Below, in pieces: positions 1-62,677 of a stretch of DNA of 64,000 nucleotides (position 1 is the first letter of the stretch; the number at the start of each line of letters is the position of its first letter). The notes below the pieces were generated by a model. The model was not told the origin of the DNA. It ran no database searches and was given only the letters and a program-made list of their open reading frames with translations. The translations under genes were made by a program, and so were the position numbers. The stretch is taken from assembly GCA_002269645.1 (NCBI GenBank), contig NIVC01002409.1:62001-126000 (forward strand), given 5' to 3'. The DNA is from Macrostomum lignano. Its lineage: Eukaryota.

Positions 1-478
1 GGTGTACATCGATATGTAGTCAACGATATTAACACAAAATTAGGCTAGTGAAAACTACTTCTAGTAGGTGAAATTGCGTATATTTACATAAAAAGTAGAT
101 AAAACGTATCAGTATGTGTAAATATCGGTGCATAATGCATATTACCCGCCTGGCCAAGTGGTCCGGCTTTTCATCCGGTTTTGGTCCGTATCGTCCAGTT
201 TTTATGCCTTTACCGGACTACCGGACCAATTCGTCCGGTTATCGTCCGGTTTCGAAGTCCGGGTGAAAAACCGGACAAAAACCGGTCAAAAACCGGATGA
301 ATTTTTACTCCGGAATCATACCGGACGAAAAACGGACGAATTCGGCCCAGTTCCGGATGTAGGGACCTGTTTTGATCCGAATTTTTGTCCGGTTTCCATC
401 CGGAAACTTGTCCGGTCCTAATCGGACAATTAAGCGGACAAAATCCAGATGGAAACCGGACTAAATCTTGCGAGATCA

Positions 479-917
479 GTAAGTAAGCCTTCACAGTCTT
501 CACAGTCTACGAAGTGTACTTTTTAGTTATGCATCATACGTACAGGATTCGCTTTAACTCCGCCAATGCCGGTCCCAAGCCCGGTTGAAAAAGGAGGAGG
601 GTTTGGGGAGACGGTCTCTCCAGTAGAAGCCATCTTTCGTATCTAATTTATTATGAAGCTGAATATGAACTTCAATTTATACAGCAATTATCTGGCTACA
701 ATATATGACACTACCTCATGTGTAGGACTACCTCAAGTGTAGGAAAGCAAACAATTAGTTTCGCTATGATAGGTATCTTGGAGGTATCTTTACTGTGTCT
801 CCAGTAATCTTATAGATAACACTGTCCAATGACCCATACTATGATACCATTGATGATGAGCACTATATGTACTCTGAAAAACACGACTAACCTTAGCTCC
901 CCAAACTTGCATTGCAG
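479..917 (+). other. Predicted 5'-UTR intron of the transposase gene, containing the twister ribozyme
   Basis: Donor GTAAGT at 479-484 (alternative GTAAGC at 483), branch point GACTAAC at 885-891, acceptor TTGCAG ending at 917, 27 nt upstream of ATG 944. Confidence 0.6.
550..606 (+). ncRNA. Twister self-cleaving ribozyme (P1 type)
   Basis: UAA-CUCC-GCC-AAU-GCCGG-UCCC-AAGC-CCGG-UUGAAAAA-GGAG-GAGGG (555-601) matches the twister core as I recall it from the rice twister (UAACACUGCCAAUGCCGGUCCCAAGCCCGGAUAAAAGUGGAGGG). P2 is covaried (CUCC 558-561/GGAG 593-596), P4 is CCGG 569-572/581-584, and both pseudoknot partners are intact. P1 is weak. Predicted cleavage between U555 and A556. Confidence 0.88.
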
Positions 918-943
918 CCCGCACCTAGTGGTTGTCCGTGTCC

Positions 944-3900
944 ATGCAGCCCTCAGGACGCAACCGGCGGCAGTATATGCAGCAGCGAAGGTTCGAGCAG
1001 AAGCTAAAAGCTGCCATAAGTAAGGGTCAGCCGTCGCTTTCCCACTCCCCAATTCAACGCGATTCTGCAACTCTGCAGACCCACGAGCCGAAACCCTCTG
1101 GCAGCGTTAATCGTACGGCAGGTATGTACTGTTCATCGAATACATCACATGGCTGCAACGAGAGAAAGTGTTACTTTTTACTACTTCTTTCAATTCCTTA
1201 TACCTTCTCGGGACAGGCGATGGCATTGTCGCGGCAGCCAGCGCCAGCGTCGACGAAGCCGACAGCGACACTGACAGCTACGCCAGCAGTGGCGCGGCGC
1301 CCCAGGGCAGCGGCGACGAAGCCGACAGCGACACTGACAGCTACGCCAGTGGTGCTGCGCCCCAGGGCAGCGGCGACGAAGCCGACAGCGACACTGACAG
1401 CTACGCCAGTGGTGCTGCGCCCCAGGGCAGCGGCGACGAAGCCGACAGCGACACTGACAGCTACGCCAGTGGTGCTGCGCCCCAGGGCAGCGGCGACGAA
1501 GCCAACAGCGACACTGAACACTGACAGCTACGCCAGTGGTGCTGCGCCCCAGGGCAGCGGCGACGAAGCCAACAGCGACACTGACAGCTACGCCAGTGGT
1601 GCTGCGCCCCAGGGCAGCGGCGACGAAGCCAACAGCGACACTGACAGCTACGCCAGTGGTGCTGCGCCCCAGGGCAACGGCGACCAGGCCGACATCGACG
1701 CCAGCGGCGCTGCGTCCCAGGGCAGCGGCGACGAGGCCAACAGCGACGCCAGCGGCGCTGTGCCGCCAAACTTCGACCTCTTCCAGCACCCATGGCACGA
1801 TGGGGTACTGGCTGAGCCCATATACTCCATAGCGCCTGCCATTTGTGAGGTCAATGACTGCGCTATTGACCTGCAGATTCCCCGTGAAAAAGTCGGCCGG
1901 CTTTTGGCTACCATCCATCGCCTCGTCCCCGGCAACAGGTTGCCGCGGACGGCGAAGACGTTGTGGCGGAATATGAAAAAGGCCCAAAGTTGCATCGGCT
2001 CCTCAAAGTGCATGACTGTGTGCAATTCCTGTCGATGTAACTATCCAGGAGACAGCAGCCAGAATGAAGGACTTTGTCGGAACTGCAATTCTCAACTTGT
2101 CTCAAATTTCTGGGTGTTCGATATCCGTCAGCAAATTAGGACTTACATCGAGGCCTGTGGATTGCTGCAGAATGTCACCTTTCCCGTGGACTTCCAACAA
2201 CCGGAGGATTGCATTCACTTCTCAACCAGCCAAATGTATGCCGAGTTTATTGAGGCGATTGAACCCCAGGATCGAATGGACTTGTCCTACACCCTGAGCT
2301 CGGATGGCTTCTCGCTGCATACTACCAGCCGAGTTGAAGTCTGCCCCGTGTACATCAGCATCAACGAAGTCCACGACCGCTTCAAACTGAAGTATGTCGT
2401 CATTTGTGGTGTATGGGCGGGAAAGAAGAAATTGCACGCGTCTGCCTTCCTTCCTTGTCTCATCGGCGCGTTGAATAACCTGCGCACGCGAGGCGTCACC
2501 TACTTAGACGACGAATCTGTGCGACGGACAATCCGGTTTCATTCGCTTCAGACCCTCTTCGACGCACCCGCTCGGGCCGACGCTCTGAATATGAGGCACT
2601 GTACGGCCACTTACGGTTGCGACAAGTGCTACATTGCCACACGTCTGCACCCATCCGGCAGTGGTCGCTACTACGACGTGGAGATTACTCCCGCAATGCT
2701 GAACGAAGCCGCCCGTCTCGGTTGTGTGCAGACCGTCGTACGCAGCATGACCGACACGTCTCATCTTGCTGAACTGCATCTGCAACGGATACCTTCTGAT
2801 CCGAACGGCGACGTCCTTGGAGTCCGCGGTCATTCTCCCCTTGGCGAAATTCTCGGATTTTACTTCGTTCGAGGCTGTCCGCCGTGTTACCTGCATCAGC
2901 TCAACGTCGGTCTATGCAAAATGAAGATGCTGCAGTTTTTTTCTGTTCGGCGCGACAAGCCTGACCGTGGCCCAGTGTCCGGATTTACACGCGAGGCAGT
3001 ACCAAGTAGACGCCCGACTGCGGAATCTTTACGTGCCCGATTGCGTGCAGCGGCATTCCGTTCGTCCGCTCAGTGACCTACGCAATATGCGCGGTCACGA
3101 GTTTGAAATGTGGCTCCTCGCTTACGGGCCACTCGTTCTTGACGGAATTCTACCAAAGGCCCATATGGACCACTTCAAGGTCCTCTCTTCCGCTGTATTT
3201 TGGATGACGGCTGACTATGCGCCCAAAACCGAATTGCGACACGTGGAAATTTCCCTGCGGCATTACCACGCGAACTTGCAGCGTCTGTTTTCGCTACGGG
3301 CTCTCACCTACAATGCACATCAGGTGTGCTGCCACATGCTGGCCTATGTGCACCTCGCTGGATCCGCGCATCGCCTATCGACTGGCCTCTTTGAAACCAT
3401 GCACAACCGTTTGGCGCAACGTCTTCATGGGACCCGCCGCAGCGATGTCGAATTGGTGAATGCTGTTGAGCGCCAGATCGGCAGCATCCAAGCGAGAGCA
3501 CGACTCCTAGGCCGGCAAGTTCCACGGCAGCAGGATGAGCGGGACCTGCGCCGCTTTGAGATCCACACCGTCGGGGGCGCTGTCCTTCGCAGGCCGAAGT
3601 CTCAACAAGTTGGCTGGCAAACCGTCTCGCTGCTGTCTGGCTGGAAAGTCAGCGCGTATCGGCCTGCAGGCGCCAGGAGAGACGCGGCCTGCTTTGCGGC
3701 TGTCGCCGACCAAACGTCCCCAACAGAGTTCCGATTCTGTCGGGTAGCCTCCATCGACGTGGAAGGTGACATCGTCGTGCTGAAGATCATCGTGCTGCCC
3801 CTGATGCAACCCGAGCCGGACCCACTGGAGTCGCTGGCCCAAGTTCCTGCAGCCTCGGTAAATCGTGGCTGCCGCTTCGTCCACGTTAGGCGACTGGGCT

Positions 3901-4025
3901 GTGACCCATTCGGTGACCTACGCATTGAACCGGTCGCCGTGCGACTCGAGGCGCTTCGTGGGGTCTGCGGTCTGCATGGCCGCAAAATTGCCTTGTTGCC
4001 CCATCCGCAATTGTGCTTCGCGTGA
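944..4025 (+). pseudogene. EnSpm/CACTA DDE transposase, frameshifted in this copy
   Basis: Family motifs SDG (D at 2303), CPVYISINE, ICGVWAGKK, FDAPARA..N......YGCDKC (D at 2561), YLHQL..GLCK, LLAYGPLVL, TYNAHQ..H and GLFE. Model: 944-1121, intron 1122-1216 (GTATGT..ACAG), 1217-4025, with a 7-bp duplication (ACACTGA, 1511-1524) and a +1 shift near 3001-3008. Confidence 0.88.
1252..1760 (+). repeat. 60-bp coding tandem repeat (DEADSDTDSYASGAAPQGSG) in the transposase N-terminus
   Basis: About 7 near-identical units plus shorter degenerate units. Confidence 0.9.
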
Positions 4026-4647
4026 ACATTAACTGCTTCGATGCTTCGTTTGTAACTTCTGTTTCAATACATGTCCGTTTATTTATATTATGCTACGCTA
4101 GGTAAGCATAAGCAATTCAATAAGACAGGGATTTAACTCGTGTAGAACATATTCTGCTTGTTTTGCTGTATTATATTATGTATGCGTGCCGTACTAATAA
4201 TAATAAAATTTATCAAAAAAGACACTAATTTTGGTTGTACACTATTGCGTTGACTTCAATTATTAATGTAGATTTATCAAACATGGGTCTAATTGTAGGA
4301 GCATTAAAACTTATGGCAGAATTTTTTGTTGAAATTTGTTATAAAAACTCAATCGGATGCTTTCGTAAAAATCAGGTGCTAGAAAAATCGTACTCAAAGC
4401 CATTTTGATCCCAGCGAGTAAGGCTACTCGTAAGTGAAAGTTGAAGATCTTAGTAGACTGTTTAAATAACGGCATTTACATTTATGGCTGTGTATAGATA
4501 CAATGTGTAAGACCTGTCTGGGAAGCAAATGTAGTTTGATGGCTTGCTTAATTAAGGGTTATTTTTAAACGACGACCAAACGTAGTTTGAGCCCCTATTA
4601 AAATTGATGAGCGCCGAAATCCACACGCCTCACGCCTTTGCAGCTGC

Positions 4648-5488
4648 ATGGCAACTGGGCATTCTGGGCATTTCCCGTCATGGGCGGCCGGACGAAGCGA
4701 TACCCAGTCTATGCCTCTAGCAGATCTTCGATCCTGCATCCAAGAAGCCGAACAACGAGGCGTGCGCGTGTACACGAGTACTCGTAGTCTGCTACTCTTC
4801 GTGGAGGCACTGAACGTGATCGACTCAGGTTGGCTGGCTACAAGGCACTGTTTCCGACGAGACCTCATCAATTAATGCTTTAATTAACGCGCCGGCCTGC
4901 CAGACGTTTCCAGATATTCAAAAAGGAGCGACATTTCTTCTTGAGAGCCCAACACTTTTCAATGTCGACTCCGATTTGCACGGTCGCTACTCGTTGTCTA
5001 TCGCACCAGGGCAGATTCGACGCGTATATCCGCGCCCAGTGGTGGGTAATTCATTTATGTTCCGGTTTGCTTCCATCAATGCGTCGTTTCAGTCAGTCAA
5101 ATCACTTCAGTCAAACTCGCGGCACTTATTAGTTTATTTATTTATTCGCACGCACGCCAATATTATGGTCTGCACCGTCACATACTTACCACTGCAGGAA
5201 GCCACGTTCGTGAGCTATTACGGACCCGAGTCGAGCAGCTACCGTGACTACACGATCGTGTCCACAGAGGAACTTCCGACTAGTCGTCGACCATGTCAAC
5301 TCGGTTCGCCACCACCATCCAAAACGCCTGACAACGGGTCCCAAGAAAGCACCGAATGGAACATGTTTGACACCCAGTCTGAGTCCCAGTCTGCGCTGGA
5401 GGTGCCGGCATCTGCAGTCTTGGAGTGCGTCTGCGGCCAAGGCAATTTCCTCGGCTGCACTTGGTGCAGGCGACATGCTAAGAAGTAG
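4648..5488 (+). pseudogene. Transposon accessory gene: HROB/DUF4539-like OB-fold protein with a C-terminal Cys cluster, frameshifted
   Basis: Removing the TGGC duplication (4831-4838) gives LLLFVEALNVIDSGWLQGTVSDETSSINALINAPACQTFPDIQKGATFLLESPTLFNV..RYSLSIAPGQIRRVYP. By eye this aligns with the human HROB OB fold as recalled (FKDPTGEMQGTVH..LKPGSVLLL..YLNVTPNNLVHIY). Probable intron ~5042-5197. Ends CVCGQGNFLGCTWC. Confidence 0.55.
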
Positions 5489-5941
5489 AAAGTTTTACAG
5501 TAGAAACTATTTGGCGGTCTATTATATCCTAACGTATAGTTTGGTTGCCGAATTGCATTTTCTGCATTGCAGTTCTTCTGTCAAGTTGTGGCTTACCCTG
5601 ATAATTATTAAAGCTGACATCATTATTGAGAGAACTGCTGAGTTCTCTATTCGTGAAAATAATTGTGTCTATTTTTCTTTGCTTTTAATACTGTTTTAAG
5701 TTTCCATAGAAAGGCTTATGCGCTCCTCTCCTCTCCTCTCTCCTGTCTCCTATATCCTCTCGATCCTCTCTCCTATCCTCTCTCCCTAGCTCTCCTCTCT
5801 TCTCCTCTCCGCCATCCGCCATCCGTTACGGACAGTTCGCTTTCGTATTCAATTCAGTTGCATTAAGTCAGTTAAGTCAGCCACAGAAATTTTTACAGAA
5901 TGTACATCACAAAACGTTTCCCGCAGCACAACTGCATCGTT

Positions 5942-7931
5942 ATGGGCCACTTAAGTAAATCCAAAGAAAAAAATAAAAAACAAAGTGAAAAAAACGAAGC
6001 GAAAAGTCTAATTCGAAACGGACAACGCAGGCCACCGTCACCAAAAGGCGAAAACTGGAAGCGGCTGCTGGTTCCGCTGCTGCTTCGACAGAGCCGCCGA
6101 CCTCGGGCTCTACTGTACGTGCTGCTGGTTCCGCTGCTGCTTCGACAGAGCCGCCGACCTCGGGCTCTACTGTACGTGCTGCTGGTTCCGCTGCTGCTTC
6201 GACAGAGCCGCCGACCTCGGGCTCTACTGTACGTGCTGCTGGTTCCGCTGCTGCTTCGACAGAGCCGCCGACCTCGGGCTCTACTGTACGTGCTGCTGGT
6301 TCCGCTGCTGCTTCGACAGAGCCGCCGACCTCGGGCTCTACTGTACGTGCTGCTGGTTCCGCTACTTCTGCATACTTGCAGTACGACTGCGTGCCGTACA
6401 AAACAGAGGGTACGAGGAGATTCTTTTTATTCAAATATTCCAACTATCACGAGAAAACCGATGTGGTCTCCACGGACGACATTGTCGGCCGCAAACGCGA
6501 TTCGTCAATACCCGTCGCTGTGGGCAGCGAAGTTCTTATAATCAAGGCTAAAGTCAATAGAACTGCGGCCAAAAAGTGGCATGGCACCCTGGTGCAGGGG
6601 CCATTCACAGAAAGGAATGCAGCCGCACGTGCAGCTTCGTTAACTAATGTTCACACCACGAGTGTCGAGCTGCCAAGGACTTGTGGCTCCTGCCGCAGCT
6701 TTTCTGTCGAAGTCCAGCGCCAGTTGGCGCCAATAGAAACTTTACGTGAGTAAATTTTTACGTTTTTAGGCATACATACACCCTAAGCCAGGATCCTCAA
6801 CAGGACAATTCCCGCATATTTATAGGGGGACAGCTAAAATCGGCGACTCAGAAGGAGACCCAGCTGCGCGAAGATAATCAGTCGCTGACGGAGCAGCTTT
6901 GCGTATCCAGCAGAATGGAAAAAAGTCTGCTGCGCCAGTTGGAGGCAGAGCAGCGGCGCAGCACTAGATTGGTAGAAGCTGCGCAGCGCAGCAACTCGCT
7001 GCTTCTCAAATCGTCGGACATCCTCTGCCACGCCACGTCCGGCCGGGTAAAGTCCGGTACCAGTCAGTCCCTGACTGATCGGGAAACTTCTGAGTCAAGC
7101 ATGCAGAGGGGAGGAGCCGTTGGTGCAGCGGCGTGTGCCCATCAACAAGACGAAGATGAGGCCGATGAGGTCGATGAGGATCTCAGTTTCACATGCGAAC
7201 AGAATCTGTCTGTTGCACAGACTCGTGCGCTGCTGACTGCAAGCCAGAAGGCAGCAAACTGTTCGGAGACCTCGTCCTCGTCCGGCTACGTGTCGCTCTC
7301 AGAGACGCAGCCGTTCGTCAAGGTGCAATTTCAGCGGCGCGCGGATCTTCAAAGGCGACTGGAAGAATTCGGAAAGGTGCCAGCCCCGTCCGATGCGGAG
7401 CACGCAGATGTCACGTTCATTCGTGCAACGGCCCTGCAGGCCCTCCTCCGCGCTCTGCTGCGCACTATGTTCACGGACGAACAATTTGCTAGTTCTAGCA
7501 TATCGGGTCGCAACTCAGAGGTGGCAAACCCAGGAAAGATGGCTGCGGTGAGAGTCTGGCTGGCCGAGAACAAAATTAGCTACACGCAAGCCAATCTAAA
7601 CAGGGCGTTCAATCGTTGCAGTGATACGGCTAAAGACCACCTCGGCATCTCGGGTATCAAAAAGCGTGCAGCTATGTCCGTCCCAATGCGGTCCAAGAAG
7701 CCCGGTACAGGTGCCGCTGCAACGAAGCGCTCAAAGAAGGCCGCCCAGAGCAGTGAGAGCACAGTTGTTGTCATCGTGGACGATCCCAGTAGCGCCAACC
7801 AGAACATCTATCCGTCTGCTTCGAATGCTACAGTTGCCAGTTCGGCCGATGCGAGCGCCGGCAGTTCGACAGCCAATTCCGGCAGTAGCGGCACTGTCGA
7901 TATGCTGCAGGAACTGTATTCGAATGATTGA
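5942..7931 (+). CDS. Transposon accessory gene: NLS + 19-aa repeats + coiled coil + BEN domain
   Basis: Model 5942-6745 + 6826-7931; intron 6746-6825 (GTGAGT..TATAG) keeps the frame. One -1 indel is needed in the A-runs at ~5988-6006. Features: KRRK NLS, coiled coil (QLREDNQSLTEQL..LLRQLEAEQRR) and BEN-like LLRALLRTMFTDEQFASSSISG..NPGKMAAVRVWL at ~7440-7630. Confidence 0.65.
6064..6366 (+). repeat. 57-bp coding tandem repeat (AAGSAAASTEPPTSGSTVR), about 5 copies
   Basis: Identical units read directly from the sequence. Confidence 0.9.
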
Positions 7932-9024
7932 CTGATTTTTATAGTTCAGACTTTCTTACTTTCCTACGTTTTGATCGTATGAGCAGGTTGAAGCAACGTT
8001 TTGAGGAGTGTGAATAAACGGAACGGGAGTCGACGTAAGATTGTTTCTTTTAGTGTTTTTAGTAATTCAATGGACAAATCTACAGTACAGGATATTGTGT
8101 TTCATGCGTTTAATTTGTTTCTTTGTGAACTATTTGTGAACTATGGCTACAGTAGTAGCAGCAGCAGCAGTAGTAAACAAAATCAGCATTCTGTCTTCCG
8201 GTTTTCGCCCGTTGTTGGTCCGCTTCTTCATCCGGTTCAGCTCCACATTCGCACTCGCCCGGTTTTCGCCCGCTTTTGGTCCGGCTGTTGGTCCGGGAAC
8301 CGCCCGGACGAACTACCAGGTGAAATTCCAGATGAGCACCGGGCGAAGCAACCGGACGAAGTCCTCAAAAAACATGTTCTCGTCCGGATTCCTAACCATT
8401 TGCGGACAAACGAGATACGAGAAAAATAAAATACATAACGCACCGGATGAAAACCGGCTGCAAAGCCGGATTTGCAGCCGGATGAAAAACCGGACCACTT
8501 GGCCAGGCGGGTTACGAAACATATAGTTGTACAGTCATAAGCATATGGGCAGCAAAAAACACACAATGTAGGTGCATATTATCGATATATTTGCAGAAAA
8601 GTAGGTGAAATATACAAAATAATACAAAGCAGGTATATATCGCTTATTAGTGTAGTAGGTGCTTGTAGATGCTAGTATAATAAAAACATAGGTTGACTCA
8701 TACGCACAATAGGGCTCTCCCAGGACAATAGTAAGAGATACGCCCCCGCATTCCTCCCCAGCGCCGCGACCAAGGGACCGCGGGCTGAGTAATGTTTCGA
8801 GGGGATCCCAATGTACAGTGCAGGCAGAGAGCTATTTTCCTACCCAAATGGGGTTTTTATTCAAGGGACCCCTCACCTAGTACAGTGCGGGCAGAGAGGA
8901 GTAACAGAGAGCAATAGAGACCGCCCCATGTACAATGCGCTCCAGGGTTGAGGTGTCAAATGGGAGTTTTTGATCCCCCGCCCCAATGTACAGTGCGCTC
9001 CAGGGTGTCAAATGGGAGTTATGA

Positions 9025-11287: not shown

Positions 11288-12049
11288 AGTTTGACTGGAA
11301 TTCTGTATGTGGTCTGTTACTCTACCTCCACTGTACATTGGGGCGGGATCCCTTGAATAAAAACATGGGGAGGAATGGAATTTCTCTATGTTACTCCTCT
11401 CTGCCCGCACTGTACTAGGTGAGGGGTCATTGGGGCGGGGGATCAAAAACTCCCATTTGACACTTCAACCCCGGAGCGCATTGTACATGGGGCGGTCTCT
11501 ATTGCTCTCTGTTACTCCTCTCTGCTCGCACTGTACTAGGTGAGGGGTCCCTTGAATAAAAACCCCATTTGGGTAGGAAAATAGCTCTCTGCCTGCACTG
11601 TACATTTTGGGATCCCCTCGAAACATTACTCAGCCCGCGGTCCCTTGGTCGCGGCGCTGTGGAGGAATGCGGGGGCGTATCTCTTACTATTGTCCTGGGG
11701 GAGCCCTATTGTGCGTATGAGTCAACCTATGTTTTACATTATACTAGCATCTACAAGCACCTACTACACTAATAAGCGATATGTACCTGCTTTGTATTAT
11801 TTTGTATATTTCACCTACTTTTCTGCCAATATATCGATAATATACATTACATTGTGTTTTTTACTGCCCATATGCTTATGACTGTACACCTATATGCGTA
11901 TTTCGTAATATGCATTATGCACCGATATTTACACATACTGATACGTTTTATCTACTTTTTATATAAATATACGCAATTTCACCTACTATAAGTAGTTTTC
12001 ACTAGCCTAATTTTGTGTTAATATCGTTTACTACATATCGATGTACACC

Positions 12050-12850
12050 CATATCGGAAGAGTGTACACTCGTATCGGGAGAGTGTACCTTTGGCTCGGG
12101 AGGGTGTACCTTTGGGGCGCCTGCAGCATACATATCGGGAGGGTCGCCTGCGGCATACATGTCGGGGTACATATCGGGAGGGTGTACATATCGGGGTACA
12201 TACATAGGTACCGACGACCTGAAGAGACGACGAGGACTGGCCTGGGCCGCATTTTGATCTGTGCGCTCCGTGCTCCAATCTGAGGCCCTGGACGACGGGC
12301 TCAAGGCTCGGCTGTTTCAGACAGTCGTCGAGACTGTCCTGTTGTACAACGCCGAGACTTGGACCCTGACGGACGCCTTGGAGAGGCAGCTGGACGCTGC
12401 GCATGCGGCAATGCTGCGTGCGGCTTTCGGAGTGCGCAGCGGCCCAGGCAGCGAGACCAATGCCGCGCTCTACACTAGGGCACGCCTGATGCGGCCTTCT
12501 GACCTGCTGCGCGGGCGGCGACTTCAACTGGCTGGCCATGTCATCCGGTCGGAGGCCCGCTGTCCTGAGCCGCTACACGACATGCTGCTGCTCAAGCTGC
12601 AGGGACCGCGGAGGCGAGGCCAAGGGCGAACGGTGCGATACCCTGACCGACTTCTGAGTGACGCTGGCGCCCCGGACCAAGCAGGGGGATGCGACTTCCT
12701 GAAGGCAATGGCCCACAGACGCGCTTTCTGACTGCTCCCCCCTTTCTGGCTACTGCGTGGCCGGCGGGAGCAGTACCTTGTTGTTGTTGTTGTTATATAT
12801 ATCGGGAGGGTCGCCTGCGGCTCGGGAGGGTGTACATATCGGGAGGGTGC
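12050..12850. repeat. TCGGGAGGGTGTAC-type subterminal repeat array, split by the LINE insertion
   Basis: About 10 related copies at 12050-12205 and 12796-12850. Confidence 0.7.
12207..12794 (+). mobile_element. 5'-truncated RTE-clade LINE fragment (RT C-terminal region, 3' UTR, (TTG)n tail)
   Basis: DDLKRRRGLAWAAF* / ETVLLYNAETWTLT / RRLQLAGHVIR are typical of the region downstream of RTE reverse transcriptase. In-frame TGA near 12255; stop at 12731; TTG tail at 12778-12794. No convincing TSD. Confidence 0.8.
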
Positions 12851-14169
12851 GCCTGTGGCATGGGCGCCTAGATGGCGCTTGGCGCGGCGCGCACGCCAGC
12901 CAATGAGAGGCGAGGAGGGTTGACACCCACCCACCTCCAAAAGGGACCTTACGGGGTCATTTAGTAGTACGAGCTAAGTAATGTGCTAAGATTTTCATAA
13001 AACTAATTATATTGTGCGTATTACCTGCTTAGCCTAGTATTGATACAAGTAGTTAGCAGTGACGCAGTGGGAGGATTTTGATTTGGTGGATTTTCATAAA
13101 TTGCTCATTGTTAGGCTTTTTCACTCGATGCACAAAAGGATAAAAAATAAATTAATGTTGTTATATTAATTGCATTGCATTTATCTGCATTTGAAGCGGC
13201 ATTTGCAAGGGCCCCAAATATATTGTGATGGGAAAAGGGCACCAGGGATCAGGTGGGAGCAGACGCGAGGGGAGCAATAGTGAAGCTCATCAGAGATGCG
13301 GTGCGGCTCTTCGCTGAATCAATAATAACAGGCGGGCCCAAGGTGGCCGGGGGCAGTGACCCCCCACGAAAATATATTGCAGCATGGTAACAATGTACCA
13401 CCTCCAAGGTAGGAGTAAATAGCTTGCTAATGCCGCCCCTCTCTCCATCGCTATAAGGCGCACTTTCCCGTGTCCCTTTGCTAGTGCTATATAGTTACAG
13501 CCTTGGCGCCCCCTTAGCACTGGATGGCGCCCTTGCAAACATCGCCCCCCCCCCAAAAAAAACCCAAAAATCCTGGGCCCGCCATTAATCAGTAATAGCC
13601 TCGAAGTGCATATTTAAACAAATCCGTACCTTCTTTCAGTCGGCAGCTTCTTGAATTCATTCTTGGTGTGCTGCCGGGTGTTTACCGGGAAAATTAAAGC
13701 TGATGTGTGCAGCAGTATTAGTTTCTGTGCTGTGGTGTATGGGGGTAGAAAAAGGGAATCGAAGACACGAAGGGGCACTGCTGTCACTACTTATAATTGA
13801 ATAATGGATCAGTGATAAAAATTGAGTCATTTATTACATATCGTTGGAATTTTAGTGCCTGGTTTGCAGTCATTGAAAGAAATTGTTTTTTTGTTGTGGT
13901 TTAAGACTTTTTAAGAATTGACCTGTCAAACTGTTGCCATCAATCAAGAAGTCCCAGTCTCCGCCCATACAAAATGCCACCTCACTCACCGGGAATCCGC
14001 CATCATCGCTGCTATTCCTCATCGGAGACGTCGCCGTCAATCAATGGGAGCTGTCTGCAGGCCATCTGCATCCGGTACTCTTCGAGTCTTGTCTGCGAAC
14101 TTCGAATTGCAGCCGCAGGAAATCCTCGCAAGCCGCTTTTATCCGCTTCTCCTTCAGCAGGCGCCGCGC

Positions 14170-15390
14170 CTCCTGCTCCTGCTTCTGCTCCCGCTTCTGC
14201 TCCTGCTTCTGCTCCTGCTCCTGCTCCTGCTTCTGCTCCTGCTCCTGCTCCTGCTTCTGCTCCTGCTCCTGCACCTGCTCCTGCTTCTGCTCCTGCTCCT
14301 GCTCCTGCTCCTGCACCTGCTCCTGCTCCCGCTTCTGCTCCTGCTTCTGCTCCCGCTTCTGCTTCTGCTTCTGCTTCTGCTTCTGCTCCTGCTTCTGCTC
14401 CCGCTTCTGCTCCCGCTTCTGCTCCCGCTTCTGCTCCTGCTTCTACTTCTGCTTCTGCTCCCGCTTCTGCTCCTGCTCCTGCACCTGCTCCTGCTTCTGC
14501 ACCTGCTCCTGCACCTGCTCCTGTACCTGCTTCTACTTCTGCTTCTGCTCCTGCTTCTGCAACTGCTACTTCTGCTCCTGCTTCTGCTTTTGTTCCTGCT
14601 TCTGCTCCTGCTTCTGCTCCTGCTTCTACTTCTGCTCCTGCTTCTGCACCTGCTTCTACTTCTGCTCCTGCTTCTGCTCCTGCTTCTCCTCCTGCTTCTA
14701 CTTCTGCTCCTGCTCCTGTACCTGCTTCTACTTCTGCTTCTGCTCCTGCTTCTGCAACTGCTACTTCTGCTCCTGCTTCTGCTTTTGTTCCTGCTTCTGC
14801 TCCTGCTTCTGCTCCTGCTTCTGCTCCTGCTCCTGCTCTTGCTCCTGCACCTGCTCCTGCACCTGCTCCTGTACCTGCTTCTACTTCTGCTTCTGCTCCT
14901 GCTTCTGCTCCTGCTTCTACTTCTGCTCCTGCTTCTGCTTCTGCTCCTGCTTCTGCTCCTGCTTCTGCTCCTGCTTCTACTTCTGCTCCTGCTTCTGCTT
15001 TTGCTCCTGCTTCTGCTCCTGCTCCTGCTTCTGCTTCTGCACCTGCTCCTGCACCTGCTCCTGTACCTGCTTCTACTTCTGCTTCTGCTCCTGCTTCTGC
15101 TCCTGCTTCTACTTCTGCTCCTGCTTCTGCTTTTGTTCCTGCTTCTGCTCCTGCTTCTACTCCTGCTTCTGCTCCTGCTTCTACTTCTGCTCCTGCTTCT
15201 GCTTTTGCTCCTGCTTCTGCTCCTGCTTCTGCTCCTGCTTCTACTTCTGCTCCTGCTTCTGCTTCTGCTCCTGCTTCTGCACCTGCTCCTGCTTCTGCTC
15301 CTGCTTCTACTTCTGCTTCTGCTTCTGCTTTTGCTTCTGCACCTGCTCCTGCTTCTGCTTCCTGCTCCTGCTTCTTCTGCTCCTGCTCCG
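14170..15390. repeat. Low-complexity (GCT/CCT/TCT/ACT) triplet-based repeat, ~1.2 kb
   Basis: Read directly; it produces the poly-Leu, PAS, CS and RS ORFs in the track. Confidence 0.9.
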
Positions 15391-16251
15391 CACGGTACCA
15401 CCTGATCGACTGATCCCCACTCTTAAACCCTTCGCAATGTTTGCAAGTGTTGCGTCATGATACAACAGTAACTTCTATTGTTGTGGCACGGTTGATAGAA
15501 CTGCAGATTTTTCTAGGACAGTTATTTCCCGTCAGGTATGGAAGCCCAGAAGGAAGCTCAGCGCAAATATTTCACTGAGCGGCTTAAGGGCATTCAGGGA
15601 GGGTGACTCCATGGCGCAGCCTCAGCCGCTTGCATCCCTGCAAGCCAGGTTTGATTTCGGGGTCATGCACAGCACAGAAGTGCTGCTGGGGACCCTCTTT
15701 GATATGCAACTCTTTTTGTAGCTCCGTGGGCCACCATAGACGAAATAGGTATAGGCAACACTTGTGAAAATAAAATATACGATCATACTGCGAACACAAA
15801 AAGTTTGCAGTCAAATGAAAGGGAATTTTTAGCTTTCCAATGACTTTAAGCTTGTTCGATTTTAGGCATGCATTATAAAATCTATAGCCAAAATATCGCT
15901 ACTTTTTGGTTGCACCTCGTATTTCAGTTTTTCATACCAAAATTTTATACCAAAACAGCCAAAAAACAGTATTTTACGAGCGCAAGTCTATGATTCATCG
16001 GCTGCTCATGCGTGAAAACTTGCCGTGAAAGCGCAGCGCAGTCTTCTGTGGCATGCTAGCGAATGCAGACGCTGAGCTGCCTCCTATACTGCCAATCTCA
16101 GCCTCACGCCGAGCTTAACGCTTGGAGACTCGTTTTTCCAGAGCTGTGAGTTGAAAATGCATCAACCATGCGACAGCAGCCACAACAGCTCAACTCTGCC
16201 TATCGCATCTGAGACTTTGAGCGGCAGTTCGCCACCCAAAACCATCTGAAA

Positions 16252-17481: not shown

Positions 17482-18362
17482 GAAGACCTGAGAGTGCATT
17501 CGTGCCTTGGTGAAAAATTGAGAGTCGAGTCGAACTCGCAAAATGATGACCCCGAACCGAATTCTGAGTTCTCATTCGCTGTCTCTTCCTAGCTACCCTC
17601 TCTTCAACAACATGAGACGTTTGAGAAGCTAAAAAAGTCAGCAGTTTAGCCTTGTTGCCATGTTCCTTAGGACAAAAACCTGAAGAAAAGGATAAAATAA
17701 TTGGGTCACTGCGCAACCCACACTACAGGTACAATTTGGTCATTTTGTGTTTATTTCATTGCTGTAATAAATAGTCAAAGAGTTCGAGCTGACTACTACA
17801 AGTAGAAGCCGGAGTACAAGCGTATATAATAATTGAAAAAGAGTTGCTATTGAAAAGACGAACAAAGGAAAACAGCCGAACCCGAGCGAGACTAGCAACC
17901 AGAGCAGAAGAAAATTGTTCGAGCACTGCTGTCTCATCACTCTACCACAAAATAGATGTCATGTGCATAAAAGAAGATAAAAATGAGACAAAAGTTTGTT
18001 CCAAATGATAAAATGGTGCACAGAAGTCGGAGAGGTTCGGGTGTCCTGCAATTACAACCAGCCTGATTTGTTCCACGAGAATTGAAAGATGCGCAAAGGA
18101 ATTCCGAGGGGGTATTTCGCTACGGGGGTATTTTTAAAGGGGAATCAAGGAGGCGGAAAAGAACAAAACGACCATATTGCCCATTGAATTTGCATGTAAC
18201 GCAGACAAATAGGGAGGAAAATTGGCAACTCCCTACTGACAGTAGGCTAGTAGTAACGCGGGCATTGAACATTGGTTTTTGTCAATCTAAAAAGTGATTA
18301 TTTGTCATGGACAAAAGAATCGCAGAGTCAGAAGGAAGTCCTTGATTTGGTTCGCGAGCGGC

Positions 18363-21300
18363 TTATTTGACCAGCCCGTCAATAACACCGGAGATTATTT
18401 CCACGCATTTGTTAATCTGCGCCTCGTTGATGACCAGCGGCGGCGCCAGGCGGATGATGTCGCCGTGGGTTGGCTTGGCCAGCAGGCCGGCCTCCGCCAG
18501 CTTCAGGCACACCTCCCAGGCATCGAACTCTGAGATTAAGGGGGAGGGAATCCAGGCTTGAGCAGGTGAGATTCGGCCTTTCTGGCTTCGAGTAGTACTA
18601 AATACTAAACAAGGGGTCGGGGATACAGAGGGGAGATGAGATGGGAAATGAGAGAGGGAGATAAGAGAGAGGGGTGTTGTTAAAGAGAGCGTAGTGACTA
18701 GCTCGTACTGCAAGTTAGTGATTGGGTGTAAGGCAATGAGGAAGTGAGGTGGAGATGAGAAAGGGGAGATCAGAGAGGGGAGACAAGAGACAGATGACAA
18801 GGGAGACAAGAGAGGGGAGATGAGAAATGGGAGATAAGAGGGGAGACAAGAGAGGGGAAAAAGAAAGGAAAGATATGAGAGAAGAGATGAGAGGGAGGTG
18901 AGAGAGGGGAGATAAGAGAGGGGAGATGAGAGGGAGATGAGAGAGGGGAGATGAGAGAGGGGAGATAAGAGGGAGATGAGAGAGGGGAGATGAGAGAGGG
19001 GAAAAAGAGAGGAAAGATATGAGAGGGAGGTGAGAGAGGGGAGATGAGAGAGGGGAGATGAGAGGGAGATGAGAGAGGGAGATGAGAGAGGGGAGATGAG
19101 AGAGGGAGATGAGAGAGGGGAGATGAGAGAGGGGAAAAAGAGAGGGGAGATGAGAGAGGGGAGATGAGAGAGGGGAGATGAGAGGGAGATGAGAGAGGGG
19201 AGATGAGAGAGGGGAGATAAGAGGGAGATGAGAGAGGGGAGATGAGAGAGGGGAAAAAGAGAGGAAAGATATGAGAGGGGAGATAGGAGAGGGGAGATAA
19301 GAGAGGAGAGATGAGAGGGAGGTGAGAGAGGGGAGATGAGAGAGGGGAGATGAGAGGGAGATGAGAGAGGGAGATGAGAGAGGGGAGATGAGAGAGGGAG
19401 ATGAGAGAGGGGAGATGAGAGAGGGGAAAAAGAGAGGGGAGATGAGAGAGGGGAGATGAGAGAGGGGAGATGAGAGGGGAGATGAGAGAGGGGAGATGAG
19501 AGAGGGGAGATGAGAGAGGGGAGATGAGAGTGAGATAAGAGGGCAGATAACAAACGGTGCAAACTGCAAGTGAGCAACAACAGGGAAACTCTGAGAAAAG
19601 CTGTCAGAATGCTGTGATCGGAGCAGACAGACTCCAGTCGCGCAATTGATACGATAGTTAGCAGCCAGACAAAGGCGGGGGGTATGGGCTCCGATTCTGA
19701 GAATCACGCGCTCCCCGCGTGCTTAGGTGAGGGCGGAGGGTGCGCAGGGGACGCACTCCGAAGCAGGAGTCTATGGAGTCTCAGCACAGGCTGCAGCTTG
19801 CAGAGCCCCCTACTCACTCACTGAGCAGCCACCCCTCCTCTCTCAGCCTGTCTGTCTGTCGTAATTGCCTTCTTAGCAATGCAGCACTGGAGGCCAGCTG
19901 TCCGGCATGCAGGCAACAGATTTACAAAACAGCAACGCTAAGAAAATTTTCAACCTGTGCGGTCGGTATGAATAAGCAATCAAAAAATTCTAATTAAAAT
20001 ATGCCTCACATTAAAACCCCAAAGCAATTTCCAGAGAGAGCAATTATCCTTCAAATGAGATTGGGATACAATAATCCTAAATCTAAACTTCCCTACTTAA
20101 CCCTAATCCTAGCCCTAACTTAAACTTCCAAGCGCGAGGGAACAGCCATAAAGATTCCAGACTCTGCCGGGCACCTCACCCTGACTGATCACGATGGCAT
20201 TCAGCAGGCCCTTGCCGCGCACGGTCTTCACCACCTTGCCGGACAGCCGGGACAGCTCCTTCCTGAGCAGCGTGCCCTGCCGCTCCGCGTTCTCCGCCAG
20301 GCCCTCCTCCTCCAGCACCTGCAGTGCCGCCATGCCGACCCGGCAGGCCATGGGGTTGCCGCCGTAGGTGGAGCCGTGCTCGCCGGGCCCGACTGACAGC
20401 ATCACTTCGTCATCGCCCAGCAGGGCGGACACCGGGTACAGTCCACCGGACAGCGCCTTGCCCAGGCACACCAGATCCGGCCGCACCTGTCCGAGGGGTG
20501 GGTTTGAGGATTTATCTAAGATTTTTGGGTATTTTTAATGTAAGTGTTTGACTTTTCGGGAATAATTCCCAAGTGTCCGAGTTTTTTATTTAATTACCGT
20601 GTCCGAGCTTTGGGATTTATGACGGTCGAGTGTCCGATTTTTTTTAGATGGCCATGTACGAGTTAGAGATTTATGATTTCCATCGAGTGTCCGAGATTTG
20701 AATTAAGAATGTCCAGAGTGTCCGAGTTTGGATTTATAATGTCCACTAAGTGTCCGAGTTTAGGATTTATAATGACCACTGAGTGTCCGAGTTGGCGATT
20801 TATAATGACCACCGAGTGTCCGAGTTTGGGATTTATAATGTCCACTAAGTGTCCGAGTTTAGAATTTATAATGTCCACCGAGTGTCCGAGTTTGGGATTT
20901 ATAATGTCCACCGAGTGTCCGAGTTTGGGATATATAATGTCCACCGAGTGTCCGAGTTTTGAGATTTCAAATCGCCGAGTGCGGTGACTCACCTTCTCGT
21001 GGTCGCTGCAGAGCCGCTTGCCAGTGCGCGCGAGGCCGGTCTGCACCTCGTCGCAGATGAGCAGCGCCCGGTGGCGGGTGCACAGCTCACGGGCTCCACG
21101 CAGGAAGCCATCCTTGGGCACCACGACGCCGGCCTCACCCTGGATGGGCTCAACCATGAAGGCCGCCACGTTGGGGTCCTGCAGCGCCTTCTCAAGGGCC
21201 TGCGGTGTGGGAAGGGAATAATGAGATTTATGCTATGAATTCCCTCACGGATTTTGACTTGGAATTTTCCTTGACAGCTACAAACTGGGGATTTCCATTG

Positions 21301-46364: not shown

Positions 46365-46861
46365 GGGTGAGGATCGGAGACGGAGGGTGAGGATCGGAGA
46401 CGGAGGGTGAGGATAGGAGATGGAGGGTGAGGATCGGAGACGGAGGGTGAGGATCGGAGATGGAGGGTGAGGATCGGAGACGGAGGGTGAGGATCGGAGA
46501 TGGAGGGTGAGGATCGGAGACGGAGGGTGAGGATCGGAGACGGAGGGCGAGGATCGGAGACGGAGGGTGAGGATCGGAGACGGAGAGTGAGGATCGGAGA
46601 CGGAGGGTGAGGATCGGAGATGGAGAGTGAGGATCGGAGACGGAGGGTGAGGATCGGAGACGGAGGGTGAGGATCGGAGACGGAGGGTGAGGATCGGAGA
46701 CGGAGGGTGAGGATCGGAGACGGAGGGTGAGGATCGGAGACGGAGGGTGAGGATCGGAGATGGAGGGTGAGGATCGGAGACGGAGGGTGAGGATCGGAGA
46801 TGAAGGGTGAGGATCGGAGATGGAGGGTGAGGATCGGAGATGGAGGGTGAGGATCGGAGAG
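46365..46861. repeat. 20-bp minisatellite (CGGAGGGTGAGGATCGGAGA)
   Basis: Read directly. Confidence 0.92.
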
Positions 46862-47237
46862 GAAACACGCTGAAAAATATATTATAAATGAAAATGGGAA
46901 CAGATGAAGAACAGCGAGAAGTGGACAGAGACACAAAGAGCAGGGGATGATAACTGGATGTTGCGACGTTTGAGCTGGGATTAATGGCGAAGTCGCGAGC
47001 TCATCTCTCATCCCGATTTTATCCTCGGTCAGTGAGGAGATTCGCAATTGTTCCTCTCAGTCGCGATTGTGTTTCGGTTGCTGGGCGACCGAATGCGAAC
47101 CCGGTGATCAGTGCGGCTTCGACAAAGGAGGGAATTATAGGTAGGGAAAAGGTAATTAATATCAGGGCGGACAAATGGGCTGCACTGTCTTTGTTAAAGT
47201 CGCTTGATTTACAACTCTAAGGCAGATGGGACTCTAA

Positions 47238-57416: not shown

Positions 57417-62677
<5,261 letters not shown>

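What the first reader, a model, noticed from the sequence alone, without database searches (positions are those of the whole stretch)
479..917. Twister ribozyme inside the 5'-UTR intron of a DNA-transposon (EnSpm) transposase gene
Seen: a complete twister core with covaried P2 (555-601), in sense orientation, between a GTAAGT donor (479), a GACTAAC branch point (885) and a TTGCAG acceptor (917), just upstream of the transposase ATG. An 8-bp hairpin (604-622) follows and could compete with the weak P1. Known: twister ribozymes in animals are typically associated with non-LTR (RTE) retrotransposon 5' ends, and P1 is dispensable in minimal twisters. I know of no report of one in a cut-and-paste DNA transposon. 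Inference: cleavage could race splicing and cap transposase output (self-limiting switch), or the motif is a passenger captured from an RTE 5' end.
Basis: partly seen in the sequence, partly recalled or inferred. Interest (0 to 1): 0.9.

Follow-up and report, generated by a model that had tools for sequence, protein, structure and literature searches.

The report
Twister ribozyme inside a DNA transposon
A genuine twister self-cleaving RNA motif sits in the non-coding leader of a cut-and-paste (EnSpm-like) transposon in the flatworm Macrostomum lignano, but it looks like a small piece borrowed from a retrotransposon, not an original part of the transposon, and no function is shown.

Summary
Window 551-606 (+) matches Rfam twister-P1 over the whole model (46.2 bits, E = 4.7e-7 for the window). 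All core nucleotides, P2, P4 and both pseudoknots are present. P3 is absent and the canonical P1 is weak. The score is below Rfam's cut-off, but P3-less twisters that head retrotransposons score 38-55 bits.

The host element is a real DNA transposon (145-8511):
- 34-nt inverted ends starting CCCGC
- a 3-bp TTA target duplication
- an empty site elsewhere in the same window
- a CMC (CACTA/Mirage/Chapaev) transposase, broken by one frameshift

The genome is Macrostomum lignano.

The intron (479-917) is plausible but untested.

I favour a passenger origin:
- Four related CMC elements have no twister.
- None of 114 metagenome loci with this twister type has a CMC transposase, and 32 have an endonuclease/reverse-transcriptase ORF directly downstream.
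- An internal paralogue of the flanks (5826-5867) lacks an 82-nt segment (556-637) that starts at the predicted cleavage site (p about 0.003).

No other copy of this family could be retrieved, so whether the twister is conserved across copies is open. Cleavage and any regulatory role are inferred, not shown.

The parts
142..144 (.). Left copy of the 3-bp target-site duplication (TTA)
   Evidence: The empty-site alignment shows a single TTA in the uninterrupted copy of the host repeat.
145..178 (+). Left terminal inverted repeat, starts CCCGCCTGGCCAAG
   Evidence: the repeat finder I1: 97% complementary to 8478-8512. The exact 23-mer occurs only at the two ends. The related element L002 also starts CCCGC.
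159..470 (+). Left subterminal repeats (CCGGAC/GTCCGG-type motifs), the presumed transposase-binding and promoter region
   Evidence: Direct and inverted repeat families. The same motif type occurs in L002.
479..917 (+). Putative 5' leader intron, or an outron if SL trans-splicing uses AG 916-917. Untested.
   Evidence: GTAAGT at 479, GACTAAC at 885-891, TTGCAG at 912-917. Eleven out-of-frame uATGs lie between 556 and ATG 944. No transcript data.
551..606 (+). P3-less type-P1 twister ribozyme. Predicted scission U555|A556. P2 558-561/593-596, P4 569-572/581-584, T1 574-576/599-601, T2 562-563/579-580.
   Evidence: Rfam RF03160: 46.2 bits, E = 4.7e-7 in the window, full model. Score is typical of the subclass.
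603..623 (+). 9-bp hairpin immediately 3' of the ribozyme core
   Evidence: MFE and centroid fold. It does not match the covariance model of the RTE post-twister hairpin.
536..642 (+). Possible long-range P1 (536-555 pairing with 626-642) enclosing the twister and the hairpin as a three-way junction. Not statistically supported.
   Evidence: MFE fold -34.4 kcal/mol, but z = -0.87 against shuffles.
556..637 (+). Candidate 82-nt insertion (twister + hairpin + tail) bounded by CTTT microhomology (552-555 and 634-637). Its 5' edge coincides with the cleavage site.
   Evidence: With this segment removed, the flanks align to 5826-5867. Score 39 against 24 undeleted; 1/500 shuffles and 3/1096 real tiles reach it. 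In the anchored junction test, 0.4% of anchors score as high.
944..3076 (+). Transposase ORF, first part (frame 2). Contains the 60-bp in-frame tandem repeat at 1245-1764, the zinc-binding cysteines and the first two catalytic Asp residues.
   Evidence: ORF list, TRF, alignment to relatives.
2936..2942 (+). T7 homopolymer where the transposase frame shifts by 1 nt (a real mutation or an assembly error)
   Evidence: Frame translations. The repaired 750-aa protein aligns as one stretch (16-749) to P0001.
2940..4025 (+). Transposase ORF, second part (frame 0), with the catalytic Glu region (HEFEMW)
5826..5867 (+). Internal paralogue of the twister flanks, without the twister module, just upstream of the second gene block
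6915..7931 (+). Second transposon ORF (338 aa), function unknown, only a weak BEN-domain hint
   Evidence: No homologues found.
8198..8477 (+). Right subterminal repeats
8478..8511 (-). Right terminal inverted repeat
8512..8514 (.). Right copy of the TTA target-site duplication
11617..12049 (-). Uninterrupted, inverted copy of the host repeat that serves as the empty site. The target TTA is at 11906-11908 (TAA on the + strand).
   Evidence: The left flank 1-144 and the right flank from 8512 onward (aligned through about 8800) align contiguously to it.

Best explanation
Window 551-606 encodes an intact P3-less type-P1 twister self-cleaving ribozyme. It lies in sense orientation in the non-coding leader of an 8,367-bp CMC-superfamily (EnSpm-like) DNA transposon of Macrostomum lignano, between the left subterminal repeats and the transposase ORF.

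The most likely origin is secondary. An insertion of about 82 nt (556-637) derived from the ribozyme-processed 5' end of a non-LTR (RTE-like) retroelement RNA landed in the transposon leader. The twister is therefore a passenger, not an ancestral or necessary part of the transposon.

Expected consequences (inferred):
- If the leader is transcribed from the subterminal promoter region, the RNA should cut itself between U555 and A556, separating the capped 5' piece from the transposase-coding part.
- The segment 479-917 is probably removed anyway, either as a cis-intron or as an outron by SL trans-splicing. The net effect on transposase output is therefore expected to be neutral to mildly attenuating.

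Shown: the motif, the transposon, its superfamily, and absence of the motif from relatives. Inferred: the origin, transcription, cleavage and its consequence.
For: Motif:
- Genuine and complete, with a score typical of P3-less twisters that head APE/RT elements.

Host element:
- TIRs and a 3-bp TSD with an empty site in the same window.
- 3046 protein relatives. 35 of 50 carry Transposase_21, 21 DUF1258, 7 DUF4218 and 3 Plavaka, and the invariant D, D and E residues are kept.

Not a family feature:
- No twister at E <= 1 in four related CMC loci: the complete 9.9-kb element L002 (44% transposase identity, same CCCGC termini and CCGGAC-type subterminal motifs), L003, L005 and the M. lignano paralogue L004.

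Usual context of this twister type:
- A metagenome scan for CTCCGC..CCGGTCCCAAGCCCGG..GGAGGAGGG gave 114 loci, about half with the same 5-nt + 8-nt L2 architecture.
- None has a CMC transposase.
- 32 have an APE/RT-like ORF on the same strand directly downstream (30 of the 70 loci with at least 800 nt downstream), and none on the opposite strand. Pfam confirmed RVT_1 in all six tested and the endonuclease domain in five.
- This matches Perere-3 in Schistosoma mansoni (PMC8501958).

Insertion signature:
- With 556-637 removed, the flanks align to an internal paralogue at 5826-5867. Score 39 against a shuffle mean of 21.4 +/- 3.8 (1/500), 3/1096 real tiles, and 24 undeleted.
- The 5' breakpoint falls at the cleavage site within a 4-nt CTTT ambiguity. 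Only 0.4% of control anchors score as high.
- An RTE-like fragment in the same window (12138-12731) shows that such elements live in this genome.

Leader removal:
- The eleven out-of-frame uATGs after the cleavage site argue that the leader is spliced out, not translated through.
- About 39% of M. lignano transcripts are SL trans-spliced (PMC5730564).
Against: - Only one copy of this transposon family could be examined, so 'this copy only' cannot be separated from 'all copies'. The relatives that lack the twister are distant (at most 44% protein identity).
- No RT ORF or recognisable retroelement sequence follows the twister. Similarity to metagenome loci stops at the ribozyme core.
- The covariance model of the conserved RTE post-twister hairpin does not hit 602-632.
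- An 82-nt insertion carrying only a 5' end is not a standard TPRT product.
- The indel evidence is modest (p about 0.003-0.004), and the deletion boundaries were chosen after inspection.
- The one Macrostomum-like RTE whose 5' end could be read (L120) shows no twister.
- The nearest twister variants by sequence (CAAAG or CGAAG / TTGAAAAA) sit next to a Helentron ORF, not behind an RT. The donor need not have been an RTE.
- All core nucleotides are intact, which also fits selection.
Confidence: 0.55

Rival explanations
1. Integral regulatory module. The twister is a fixed component of this transposon family. Co-transcriptional self-cleavage inside the leader intron races splicing and so caps transposase output, in the way proposed for the intronic Cpeb3 ribozyme.
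For: - Sense orientation. Every catalytic and tertiary-contact nucleotide is intact.
- The position between a consensus donor and a branch/acceptor pair is rare in this window.
- There is a precedent for a splicing-versus-cleavage race in Cpeb3 (PMC10919898).
- The element is young: TIRs 97% complementary, host-repeat copies about 97% identical. Intactness is therefore weak evidence either way.
Against: - Absent from all four related CMC elements examined.
- No second copy was available to show conservation.
- The internal paralogue suggests a recent insertion.
- This copy carries a frameshift in the transposase.
- No transcript evidence for the intron or for the cut.
Confidence: 0.17
2. Co-opted 5'-processing cassette. 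As in RTE/R2 elements, the ribozyme trims read-through host transcripts, so that the transposase can be expressed without its own promoter from the uncapped 3' cleavage product.
For: - In S. mansoni, twister-variant cleavage was sufficient for translation of a downstream reporter (PMC8501958 abstract).
- The element sits inside another repeat and could be read through.
Against: - 388 nt and 11 out-of-frame uATGs separate the cut from ATG 944. In RTE-like loci the ORF mostly starts within about 0-400 nt of the twister, and in the full-length examples within about 0-200 nt.
- Splice signals suggest that this stretch is removed.
- Relatives have no ribozyme.
Confidence: 0.06
3. Silent relic. The motif is a true twister by descent but is irrelevant here. 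It is either not transcribed in this orientation or misfolds: the canonical P1 is weak, the GGAGGAGG stretch allows an alternative pairing register, and a hairpin flanks the core. No cleavage occurs in vivo.
For: - The canonical P1 has one Watson-Crick pair.
- The MFE fold uses a shifted register for CUCC (596-599) and shows no unusual stability, z = -0.87.
- The copy has a broken transposase.
Against: - P1 is dispensable for near wild-type cleavage (PMC5408937).
- P1-poor variants in Schistosoma are active (PMC8501958).
- The same P3-less 5+8 architecture recurs in dozens of loci, many attached to intact ORFs.
Confidence: 0.2
4. Chance resemblance built from the CCGG-rich subterminal repeat vocabulary of the transposon.
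For: Fragments of the core resemble the element's own repeats: CCGGTCCTAA at 412-421 against CCGGTCCCAA at 569-578, and AAGTCCGGGTGAAAAA at 255-270 against AAGCCCGGTTGAAAAA at 577-592.
Against: - Full-length model match with E = 4.7e-7 in the window.
- 95-98% identity over 47-49 nt to the closest independent natural twisters.
- P2, T1 and T2 are all complementary.
Confidence: 0.02

Closest known systems
Twister / T-variant ribozymes at the 5' end of Perere-3 (RTE clade) non-LTR retrotransposons of Schistosoma mansoni (PMC8501958)
   Same: - Flatworm host.
- Identical P2 (CUCC/GGAG), L1 (UAA / GAGGG), P4-L4 and a UUGG-like 3' P1 strand.
- Poor P1, whose 5' strand comes from flanking DNA.
- The junction with flanking DNA lies at the cleavage site.
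   Different: - The Schistosoma examples listed have a P3 stem and a 5-nt GUAAA L2 strand, and an APE/RT ORF follows them.
- Here there is no P3, L2 is an 8-nt UUGAAAAA, no RT follows, and the host is a DNA transposon.
P3-less twisters heading APE/RT ORFs in metagenome contigs
   Same: Same 5-nt + 8-nt L2 architecture and the same Rfam score range (38-55 bits).
   Different: They are followed by a conserved, covarying hairpin plus CGUAAAAA and then an ORF of about 1000 aa. The window's hairpin does not fit that model and no RT follows it.
Oryza sativa Osa-1-4 twister (the three-stem crystallised form; reviewed in PMC5408937; its sequence is recalled from memory)
   Same: Minimal P1-P2-P4 architecture without P3, with the same L4 and pseudoknots.
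   Different: It has a fully paired P1 and a different P2 sequence. It comes from a plant and has no transposon context that I know of.
Cpeb3 intronic HDV-like ribozyme of mammals (PMC10919898)
   Same: A self-cleaving ribozyme in sense orientation inside an intron. Its cleavage competes with co-transcriptional splicing and lowers protein output.
   Different: It is a different ribozyme class, sits in a conserved host gene, and has experimental support. Here both the intron and the cleavage are unverified.
R2 SIDEs: short internally deleted R2 elements that keep the 5' ribozyme and the 3' end (PMC3414825)
   Same: A precedent for very short retroelement derivatives that keep the 5' self-cleaving ribozyme.
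   Different: They carry an HDV-like ribozyme, are rDNA-specific and have a recognisable 3' end. The 82-nt module here has no identified 3' recognition sequence.
Maize En/Spm (CACTA) and animal CMC (Chapaev/Mirage) transposons (general knowledge; Pfam Transposase_21, DUF1258, DUF4218)
   Same: 3-bp TSD, subterminal repeat arrays, a DDE transposase related to tnp2, more than one gene, and an untranslated leader with an intron.
   Different: The termini are CCCGC, not CACTA. No ribozyme has been described in these elements in the literature I could search.

Membership tests
Twister ribozyme, type P1 (Rfam RF03160) | Strongly conserved nucleotides of L1 and L4 (at least 10 positions >97% conserved), including the A 3' of the scissile bond | tested here: met
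   All upper-case consensus positions match in the cmscan alignment. The definition is taken from PMC5408937.
Twister ribozyme, type P1 (Rfam RF03160) | Essential stems P2 (4 bp) and P4 | tested here: met
   P2 is 558-561 with 593-596, all Watson-Crick. P4 is 569-572 with 581-584.
Twister ribozyme, type P1 (Rfam RF03160) | Complementarity for pseudoknots T1 (L4 with the L1 3' strand) and T2 (L4 with L2 GC) | tested here: met
   By inspection: CCC 574-576 with GGG 599-601, and GC 562-563 with GC 579-580. Folding tools cannot model pseudoknots.
Twister ribozyme, type P1 (Rfam RF03160) | Stem P1 adjoining the U-A cleavage site | tested here: inconclusive
   The canonical register has 1 Watson-Crick pair of 4. 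A long-range alternative, 551-555 with 626-630, appears in the MFE fold but is not significant. P1 is dispensable for cleavage (PMC5408937).
Twister ribozyme, type P1 (Rfam RF03160) | Score at or above the Rfam gathering threshold (67.2 bits) | tested here: not met
   46.2 bits. P3-less natural examples linked to RT ORFs score 38-55 bits, so the cut-off excludes the whole subclass.
Twister ribozyme, type P1 (Rfam RF03160) | Site-specific self-cleavage | not testable with these tools
   Needs in vitro transcription and a cleavage assay.
CMC (CACTA/EnSpm-Mirage-Chapaev) DNA transposons | DDE transposase homologous to tnp2 (Pfam Transposase_21 and allies) | tested here: met
   The window protein has no direct significant Pfam hit. 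Its relatives do: 35/50 Transposase_21, 21 DUF1258, 7 DUF4218, 3 Plavaka. The invariant D178, D264 and E residues are kept.
CMC (CACTA/EnSpm-Mirage-Chapaev) DNA transposons | Short TSD (2-4 bp; 3 bp for CACTA/EnSpm) flanking the TIRs | tested here: met
   TTA on both sides and once in the empty site.
CMC (CACTA/EnSpm-Mirage-Chapaev) DNA transposons | Termini beginning CACTA/CACTG (CACTA/EnSpm proper) | tested here: not met
   The termini are CCCGCC...GGCGGG. The element is therefore a CMC member but not a canonical CACTA element.
CMC (CACTA/EnSpm-Mirage-Chapaev) DNA transposons | Arrays of subterminal repeats at both ends | tested here: met
   CCGGAC/CCGGAT-type motifs at 159-470 and 8198-8500. 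The same type occurs in L002.
Twister-headed RTE-type non-LTR retrotransposon (Perere-3-like) | APE/RT ORF on the same strand shortly downstream of the ribozyme | tested here: not met
   No RT or APE similarity within the element. The only RTE-like fragment in the window is at 12138-12731.
Twister-headed RTE-type non-LTR retrotransposon (Perere-3-like) | Target-site duplication abutting the cleavage site | tested here: inconclusive
   Only a 4-nt CTTT repeat (552-555 and 634-637). Longer anchored matches are at chance level. The paralogue comparison supports an 82-nt indel.
Twister-headed RTE-type non-LTR retrotransposon (Perere-3-like) | Conserved post-ribozyme hairpin plus CGUAAAAA, seen in many metagenome examples | tested here: not met
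   The hairpin covaries in 24 loci, but model R1 gives no hit at 602-632.
Spliceosomal 5'-leader intron | GT...AG boundaries with consensus donor, branch site and polypyrimidine/acceptor | tested here: met
   GTAAGT at 479, GACTAAC at 885, TTGCAG at 917. This is sequence only.
Spliceosomal 5'-leader intron | A spliced transcript joining 478 to 918 | not testable with these tools
   No transcript data are reachable. The GenBank annotation of this assembly excluded transcripts overlapping repeats (PMC5730564).

The most novel reading that the evidence does not exclude
The twister is a fixed, selected component of this Macrostomum CMC transposon family. It cleaves the transposase pre-mRNA leader in competition with cis- or trans-splicing and so sets transposase dosage. 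That would be the first ribozyme-based autoregulation described in a eukaryotic cut-and-paste transposon. Together with the Helentron-linked paired twisters seen in metagenome contigs, it would mean that twisters are recurrent accessories of DNA transposons, not only of retrotransposons.
Probability: 0.13. Interest if true: 0.8.

Novelty: new member of a known kind. Interest (0 to 1): 0.4.

Why it matters
The biological role of twister ribozymes is documented only for RTE-type retrotransposons in Schistosoma. A natural, intact twister lying in sense inside a transposase pre-mRNA would be a ready-made test of how intronic or leader self-cleavage interacts with splicing and SL trans-splicing. 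Macrostomum lignano can be made transgenic, so the test is practical.

If the module proves to be a passenger, it still matters in two ways. It documents how ribozyme-processed retroelement 5' ends get scattered into other mobile elements. It also shows that Rfam's twister-P1 threshold misses the whole P3-less subclass.

Tried and rejected
1. Rfam at gathering thresholds found nothing. The motif appears only in E-value mode.
2. Other copies of the same transposon family could not be found.
   - Protein searches with the transposase core and with ORF3 returned nothing.
   - Exact-protein look-ups of four window ORFs (6915-7931, 2967-4025, 944-3076) failed, as did those for two relatives, P0003 and P0007.
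   - There is no second copy in the window.
   - Copy-level conservation and covariation could therefore not be tested.
3. A long TSD abutting the cleavage site was sought. Only chance-level 7-9-mers turned up.
4. Homology of the 603-623 hairpin to the conserved RTE post-twister hairpin was tested. The hairpin covaries among 24 metagenome loci, but the covariance model does not recognise the window sequence. Rejected.
5. Extended similarity of 479-931 to any fetched locus was sought. It is confined to the ribozyme core.
6. A Macrostomum-like RTE 5' end (L120) was inspected for a twister. None was seen.
7. The long-range P1 and three-way junction seen in the MFE fold is not more stable than shuffles.
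8. Pfam on the window ORFs directly gave only a weak DUF1258 hit. The superfamily had to be assigned through relatives.
Full report
**Source.** The window is from Macrostomum lignano, a free-living flatworm. The intronless CDK5-activator gene at 44149-45249 (-) is found exactly on NCBI GCA_002269645.1, contig NIVC01002409.1. Window position equals record position minus 62,000. NIVC00000000 is the Mlig_3_7 assembly (PMC5730564). Other window genes are metazoan: CNNM, fasciclin, ornithine aminotransferase.

**The observation.** Rfam at gathering thresholds reports nothing. In E-value mode RF03160 (twister-P1) matches 551-606 on the + strand across the whole model. The score is 46.2 bits, with E = 4.5e-9 in a 600-nt search and E = 4.7e-7 in the whole window, where it is the only credible hit.

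All highly conserved positions are present. Reading the sequence against the family definition in PMC5408937:
- cleavage site U555|A556
- P2 CUCC 558-561 with GGAG 593-596
- P4 569-572 with 581-584
- T1 CCC 574-576 with GGG 599-601
- T2 GC 562-563 with GC 579-580

P3, which is optional, is missing. The L2 3' strand is UUGAAAAA. The canonical P1 has a single Watson-Crick pair. P1 is dispensable for catalysis (PMC5408937), and P1-poor variants are active in Schistosoma (PMC8501958).

The score is below the 67.2-bit cut-off because of the architecture, not decay. P3-less twisters that directly precede intact endonuclease/RT ORFs score 38.4-55.2 bits, and P3-bearing ones score 65.8-68.1.

The MFE fold also closes a long helix, 536-555 with 626-642, around the twister and hairpin. 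Its stability is not unusual (z = -0.87), so I do not rely on it.

**The host element.** It is a verified DNA transposon.
- A 34-nt TIR (145-178 and 8478-8511) begins CCCGCC.
- Both ends carry arrays of CCGGAC/CCGGAT-type subterminal repeats.
- The element sits in another repeat. An uninterrupted inverted copy of that repeat lies at about 11617-12049. Aligning it to the flanks shows one TTA where the filled site has TTA on each side, so the TSD is 3 bp and the boundaries are exact.
- The transposase is in two overlapping frames (932/944-3076 and 2940-4025) that differ by one base at a T7 run.
- The repaired 750-aa protein finds 3046 relatives. The best (P0001, 44% identity) aligns in one stretch over residues 16-749. 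The frameshift is therefore a lesion of this copy or an assembly error, not an intron.
- The window protein has no significant Pfam hit itself. Of 50 relatives, 35 match Transposase_21 (tnp2), 21 DUF1258, 7 DUF4218 and 3 Plavaka, and the catalytic D, D and E columns are kept.

It is therefore a CMC (CACTA/Mirage/Chapaev) element. That is 'EnSpm' in the loose Repbase sense, without CACTA termini. P0001 lies on a 10.2-kb marine metagenome contig (L002) that holds a complete 9.9-kb relative with the same CCCGC termini and the same subterminal motif type.

**The intron.** The donor, branch and acceptor motifs are there. GTAAGT is rare in this window (3 on the + strand), and only this one is followed by CTAAC-N10-40-YAG within 1 kb. 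Eleven out-of-frame ATGs lie between the cleavage site and ATG 944, so this stretch is very likely removed from the mature mRNA. Roughly 39% of M. lignano transcripts are SL trans-spliced, so the AG at 917 could equally be a trans-splice acceptor. No transcript evidence was reachable, because the GenBank annotation excluded transcripts overlapping repeats.

**Is the twister part of the transposon?** Three lines of evidence say probably not originally.

(a) Relatives. No twister appears at E <= 1 in L002, L003, L005 or the M. lignano paralogue L004, 46 kb in all, and no core 12-mer is present.

(b) Usual context. A metagenome scan for this P2/L4/L1 combination returned 114 loci.
- About half share the exact P3-less 5-nt + 8-nt L2 layout.
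- None has a CMC transposase.
- 32 have an APE/RT-like ORF on the same strand starting right after the ribozyme (30 of the 70 loci with at least 800 nt downstream), and none on the other strand.
- Pfam confirmed RVT_1 in all six tested, and the Exo_endo_phos endonuclease domain in five of them.
- This mirrors Perere-3 in Schistosoma.
- The scan fixed P2 = CUCC/GGAG, so it describes that subclass only.

(c) An insertion signature.
- When 556-637 is removed, the joined flanks align to 5826-5867 inside the same element.
- The alignment is TACGTACAGGATTCGCTTT + CGTATCTAATT against TACGGACAG--TTCGCTTT + CGTATTCAATT.
- The score is 39 against 24 undeleted. Shuffles average 21.4 +/- 3.8 (1/500), and 3 of 1096 real tiles reach it.
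- In an anchored junction test, only 0.4% of positions in the element do as well as the cleavage site.
- The breakpoints share CTTT.
- An insertion that starts exactly at the ribozyme's 5' product end is what a retro-derived copy of a self-cleaved RNA would look like.

This evidence is moderate, not strong.

**Evidence against the passenger reading.**
- No RT sequence follows the twister.
- Similarity to other loci ends with the core.
- The covarying RTE post-twister hairpin is not what the window has.
- An 82-nt 5'-end-only insert is unorthodox for target-primed reverse transcription.
- I could not obtain a second copy of this family.
- The closest twister variants by sequence (CAAAG or CGAAG / UUGAAAAA) belong to a group that occurs as pairs about 273 nt apart. 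In L070 they lie about 450 nt downstream of a 1733-aa Helentron Rep/helicase/endonuclease ORF. The donor may therefore not have been an RTE.

**Mechanism (inferred).** Transcription from the subterminal region would include the ribozyme in sense. Cleavage at U555/A556 would leave a capped 5' fragment ending in a 2',3'-cyclic phosphate, and a 5'-OH RNA carrying the transposase ORF.

If 479-917 is a cis-intron, cleavage before exon ligation would lower output, as proposed for the Cpeb3 ribozyme (PMC10919898). If 917 is an SL acceptor, cleavage is harmless.

My confidence in each reading:

| Reading | Confidence |
|---|---|
| Retro-derived passenger with neutral-to-attenuating effect | 0.55 |
| Silent relic | 0.20 |
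| Selected self-limiting switch | 0.17 |
| RTE-like expression cassette | 0.06 |
| Chance resemblance | 0.02 |

**Novelty.** Full-text searches found twisters linked only to non-LTR retrotransposons. They found no self-cleaving ribozyme described inside a eukaryotic cut-and-paste or Helitron-type transposon. The ribozyme itself is an ordinary member of a known class, and its location is unusual. The interest is moderate, and would be high only if copy-level conservation or in vivo cleavage were shown.

Noticed in passing
L070 (twisters at 192-246 and 465-519, - strand; ORF 959-6157, - strand); also L074, L100, L101, L114: The metagenome twisters most similar to the window's (CGAAG or CAAAG / TTGAAAAA) occur as same-strand pairs about 273 nt apart. 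In L070 they lie about 450 nt downstream of a 1733-aa Helentron-type ORF (Helitron_like_N + PIF1 + Exo_endo_phos). This suggests a twister-bounded unit in the 3' region of a rolling-circle DNA transposon. I found no report of this.
   Followed up: partly
window 11617-12049 (-) versus 1-144 and 8512-8800: The transposon is inserted in another repeat, and an intact inverted copy of that repeat lies 3 kb downstream. This gives a perfect empty site (about 97% identical) and shows that the insertion is recent.
   Followed up: yes
window 12138-12731 (+): A 5'-truncated RTE-like non-LTR fragment (C-terminal RT region). It is 50-88% identical to short metagenome proteins and to a UniRef Macrostomum lignano entry. 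The element ends in a (GTT)n tract.
   Followed up: partly
window 1245-1764: The N-terminal part of the transposase ORF contains 7.4 copies of a 60-bp in-frame tandem repeat. A 7-bp insertion near 1516 switches the repeat's reading frame, and a possible short intron lies at 1122-1215. The true N-terminus of the protein is therefore uncertain.
   Followed up: no
window 255-270, 412-421 versus 569-592: The transposon's own subterminal repeat vocabulary (CCGGTCCTAA, AAGTCCGGGTGAAAAA) resembles parts of the twister P4/L4/L2 (CCGGTCCCAA, AAGCCCGGTTGAAAAA). This is probably coincidence.
   Followed up: no
L006-L119 (24 representative loci in alignment A2): Many twister-headed APE/RT elements carry a conserved hairpin immediately after the ribozyme (UUGG-GCGUGRGG-loop-CCYCACCCC), followed by CGUAAAAA. 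It shows compensatory changes in 6 of 9 pairs, with 88.6% of cells paired. I have not seen this extra 5'-UTR element described.
   Followed up: partly
Rfam RF03160, tested on L017, L018, L029, L062, L068, L078 and the window: The twister-P1 gathering score (67.2 bits) excludes P3-less natural twisters, which score 38-55 bits. Standard annotation pipelines will therefore miss this whole subclass.
   Followed up: yes
window 13900-15500, 18300-19700, 46200-48900, 50100-52000, 57900-58700, 60100-61250: Very long micro- and minisatellite arrays produce spurious long ORFs in several frames. This fits the high tandem-repeat content reported for this genome.
   Followed up: no
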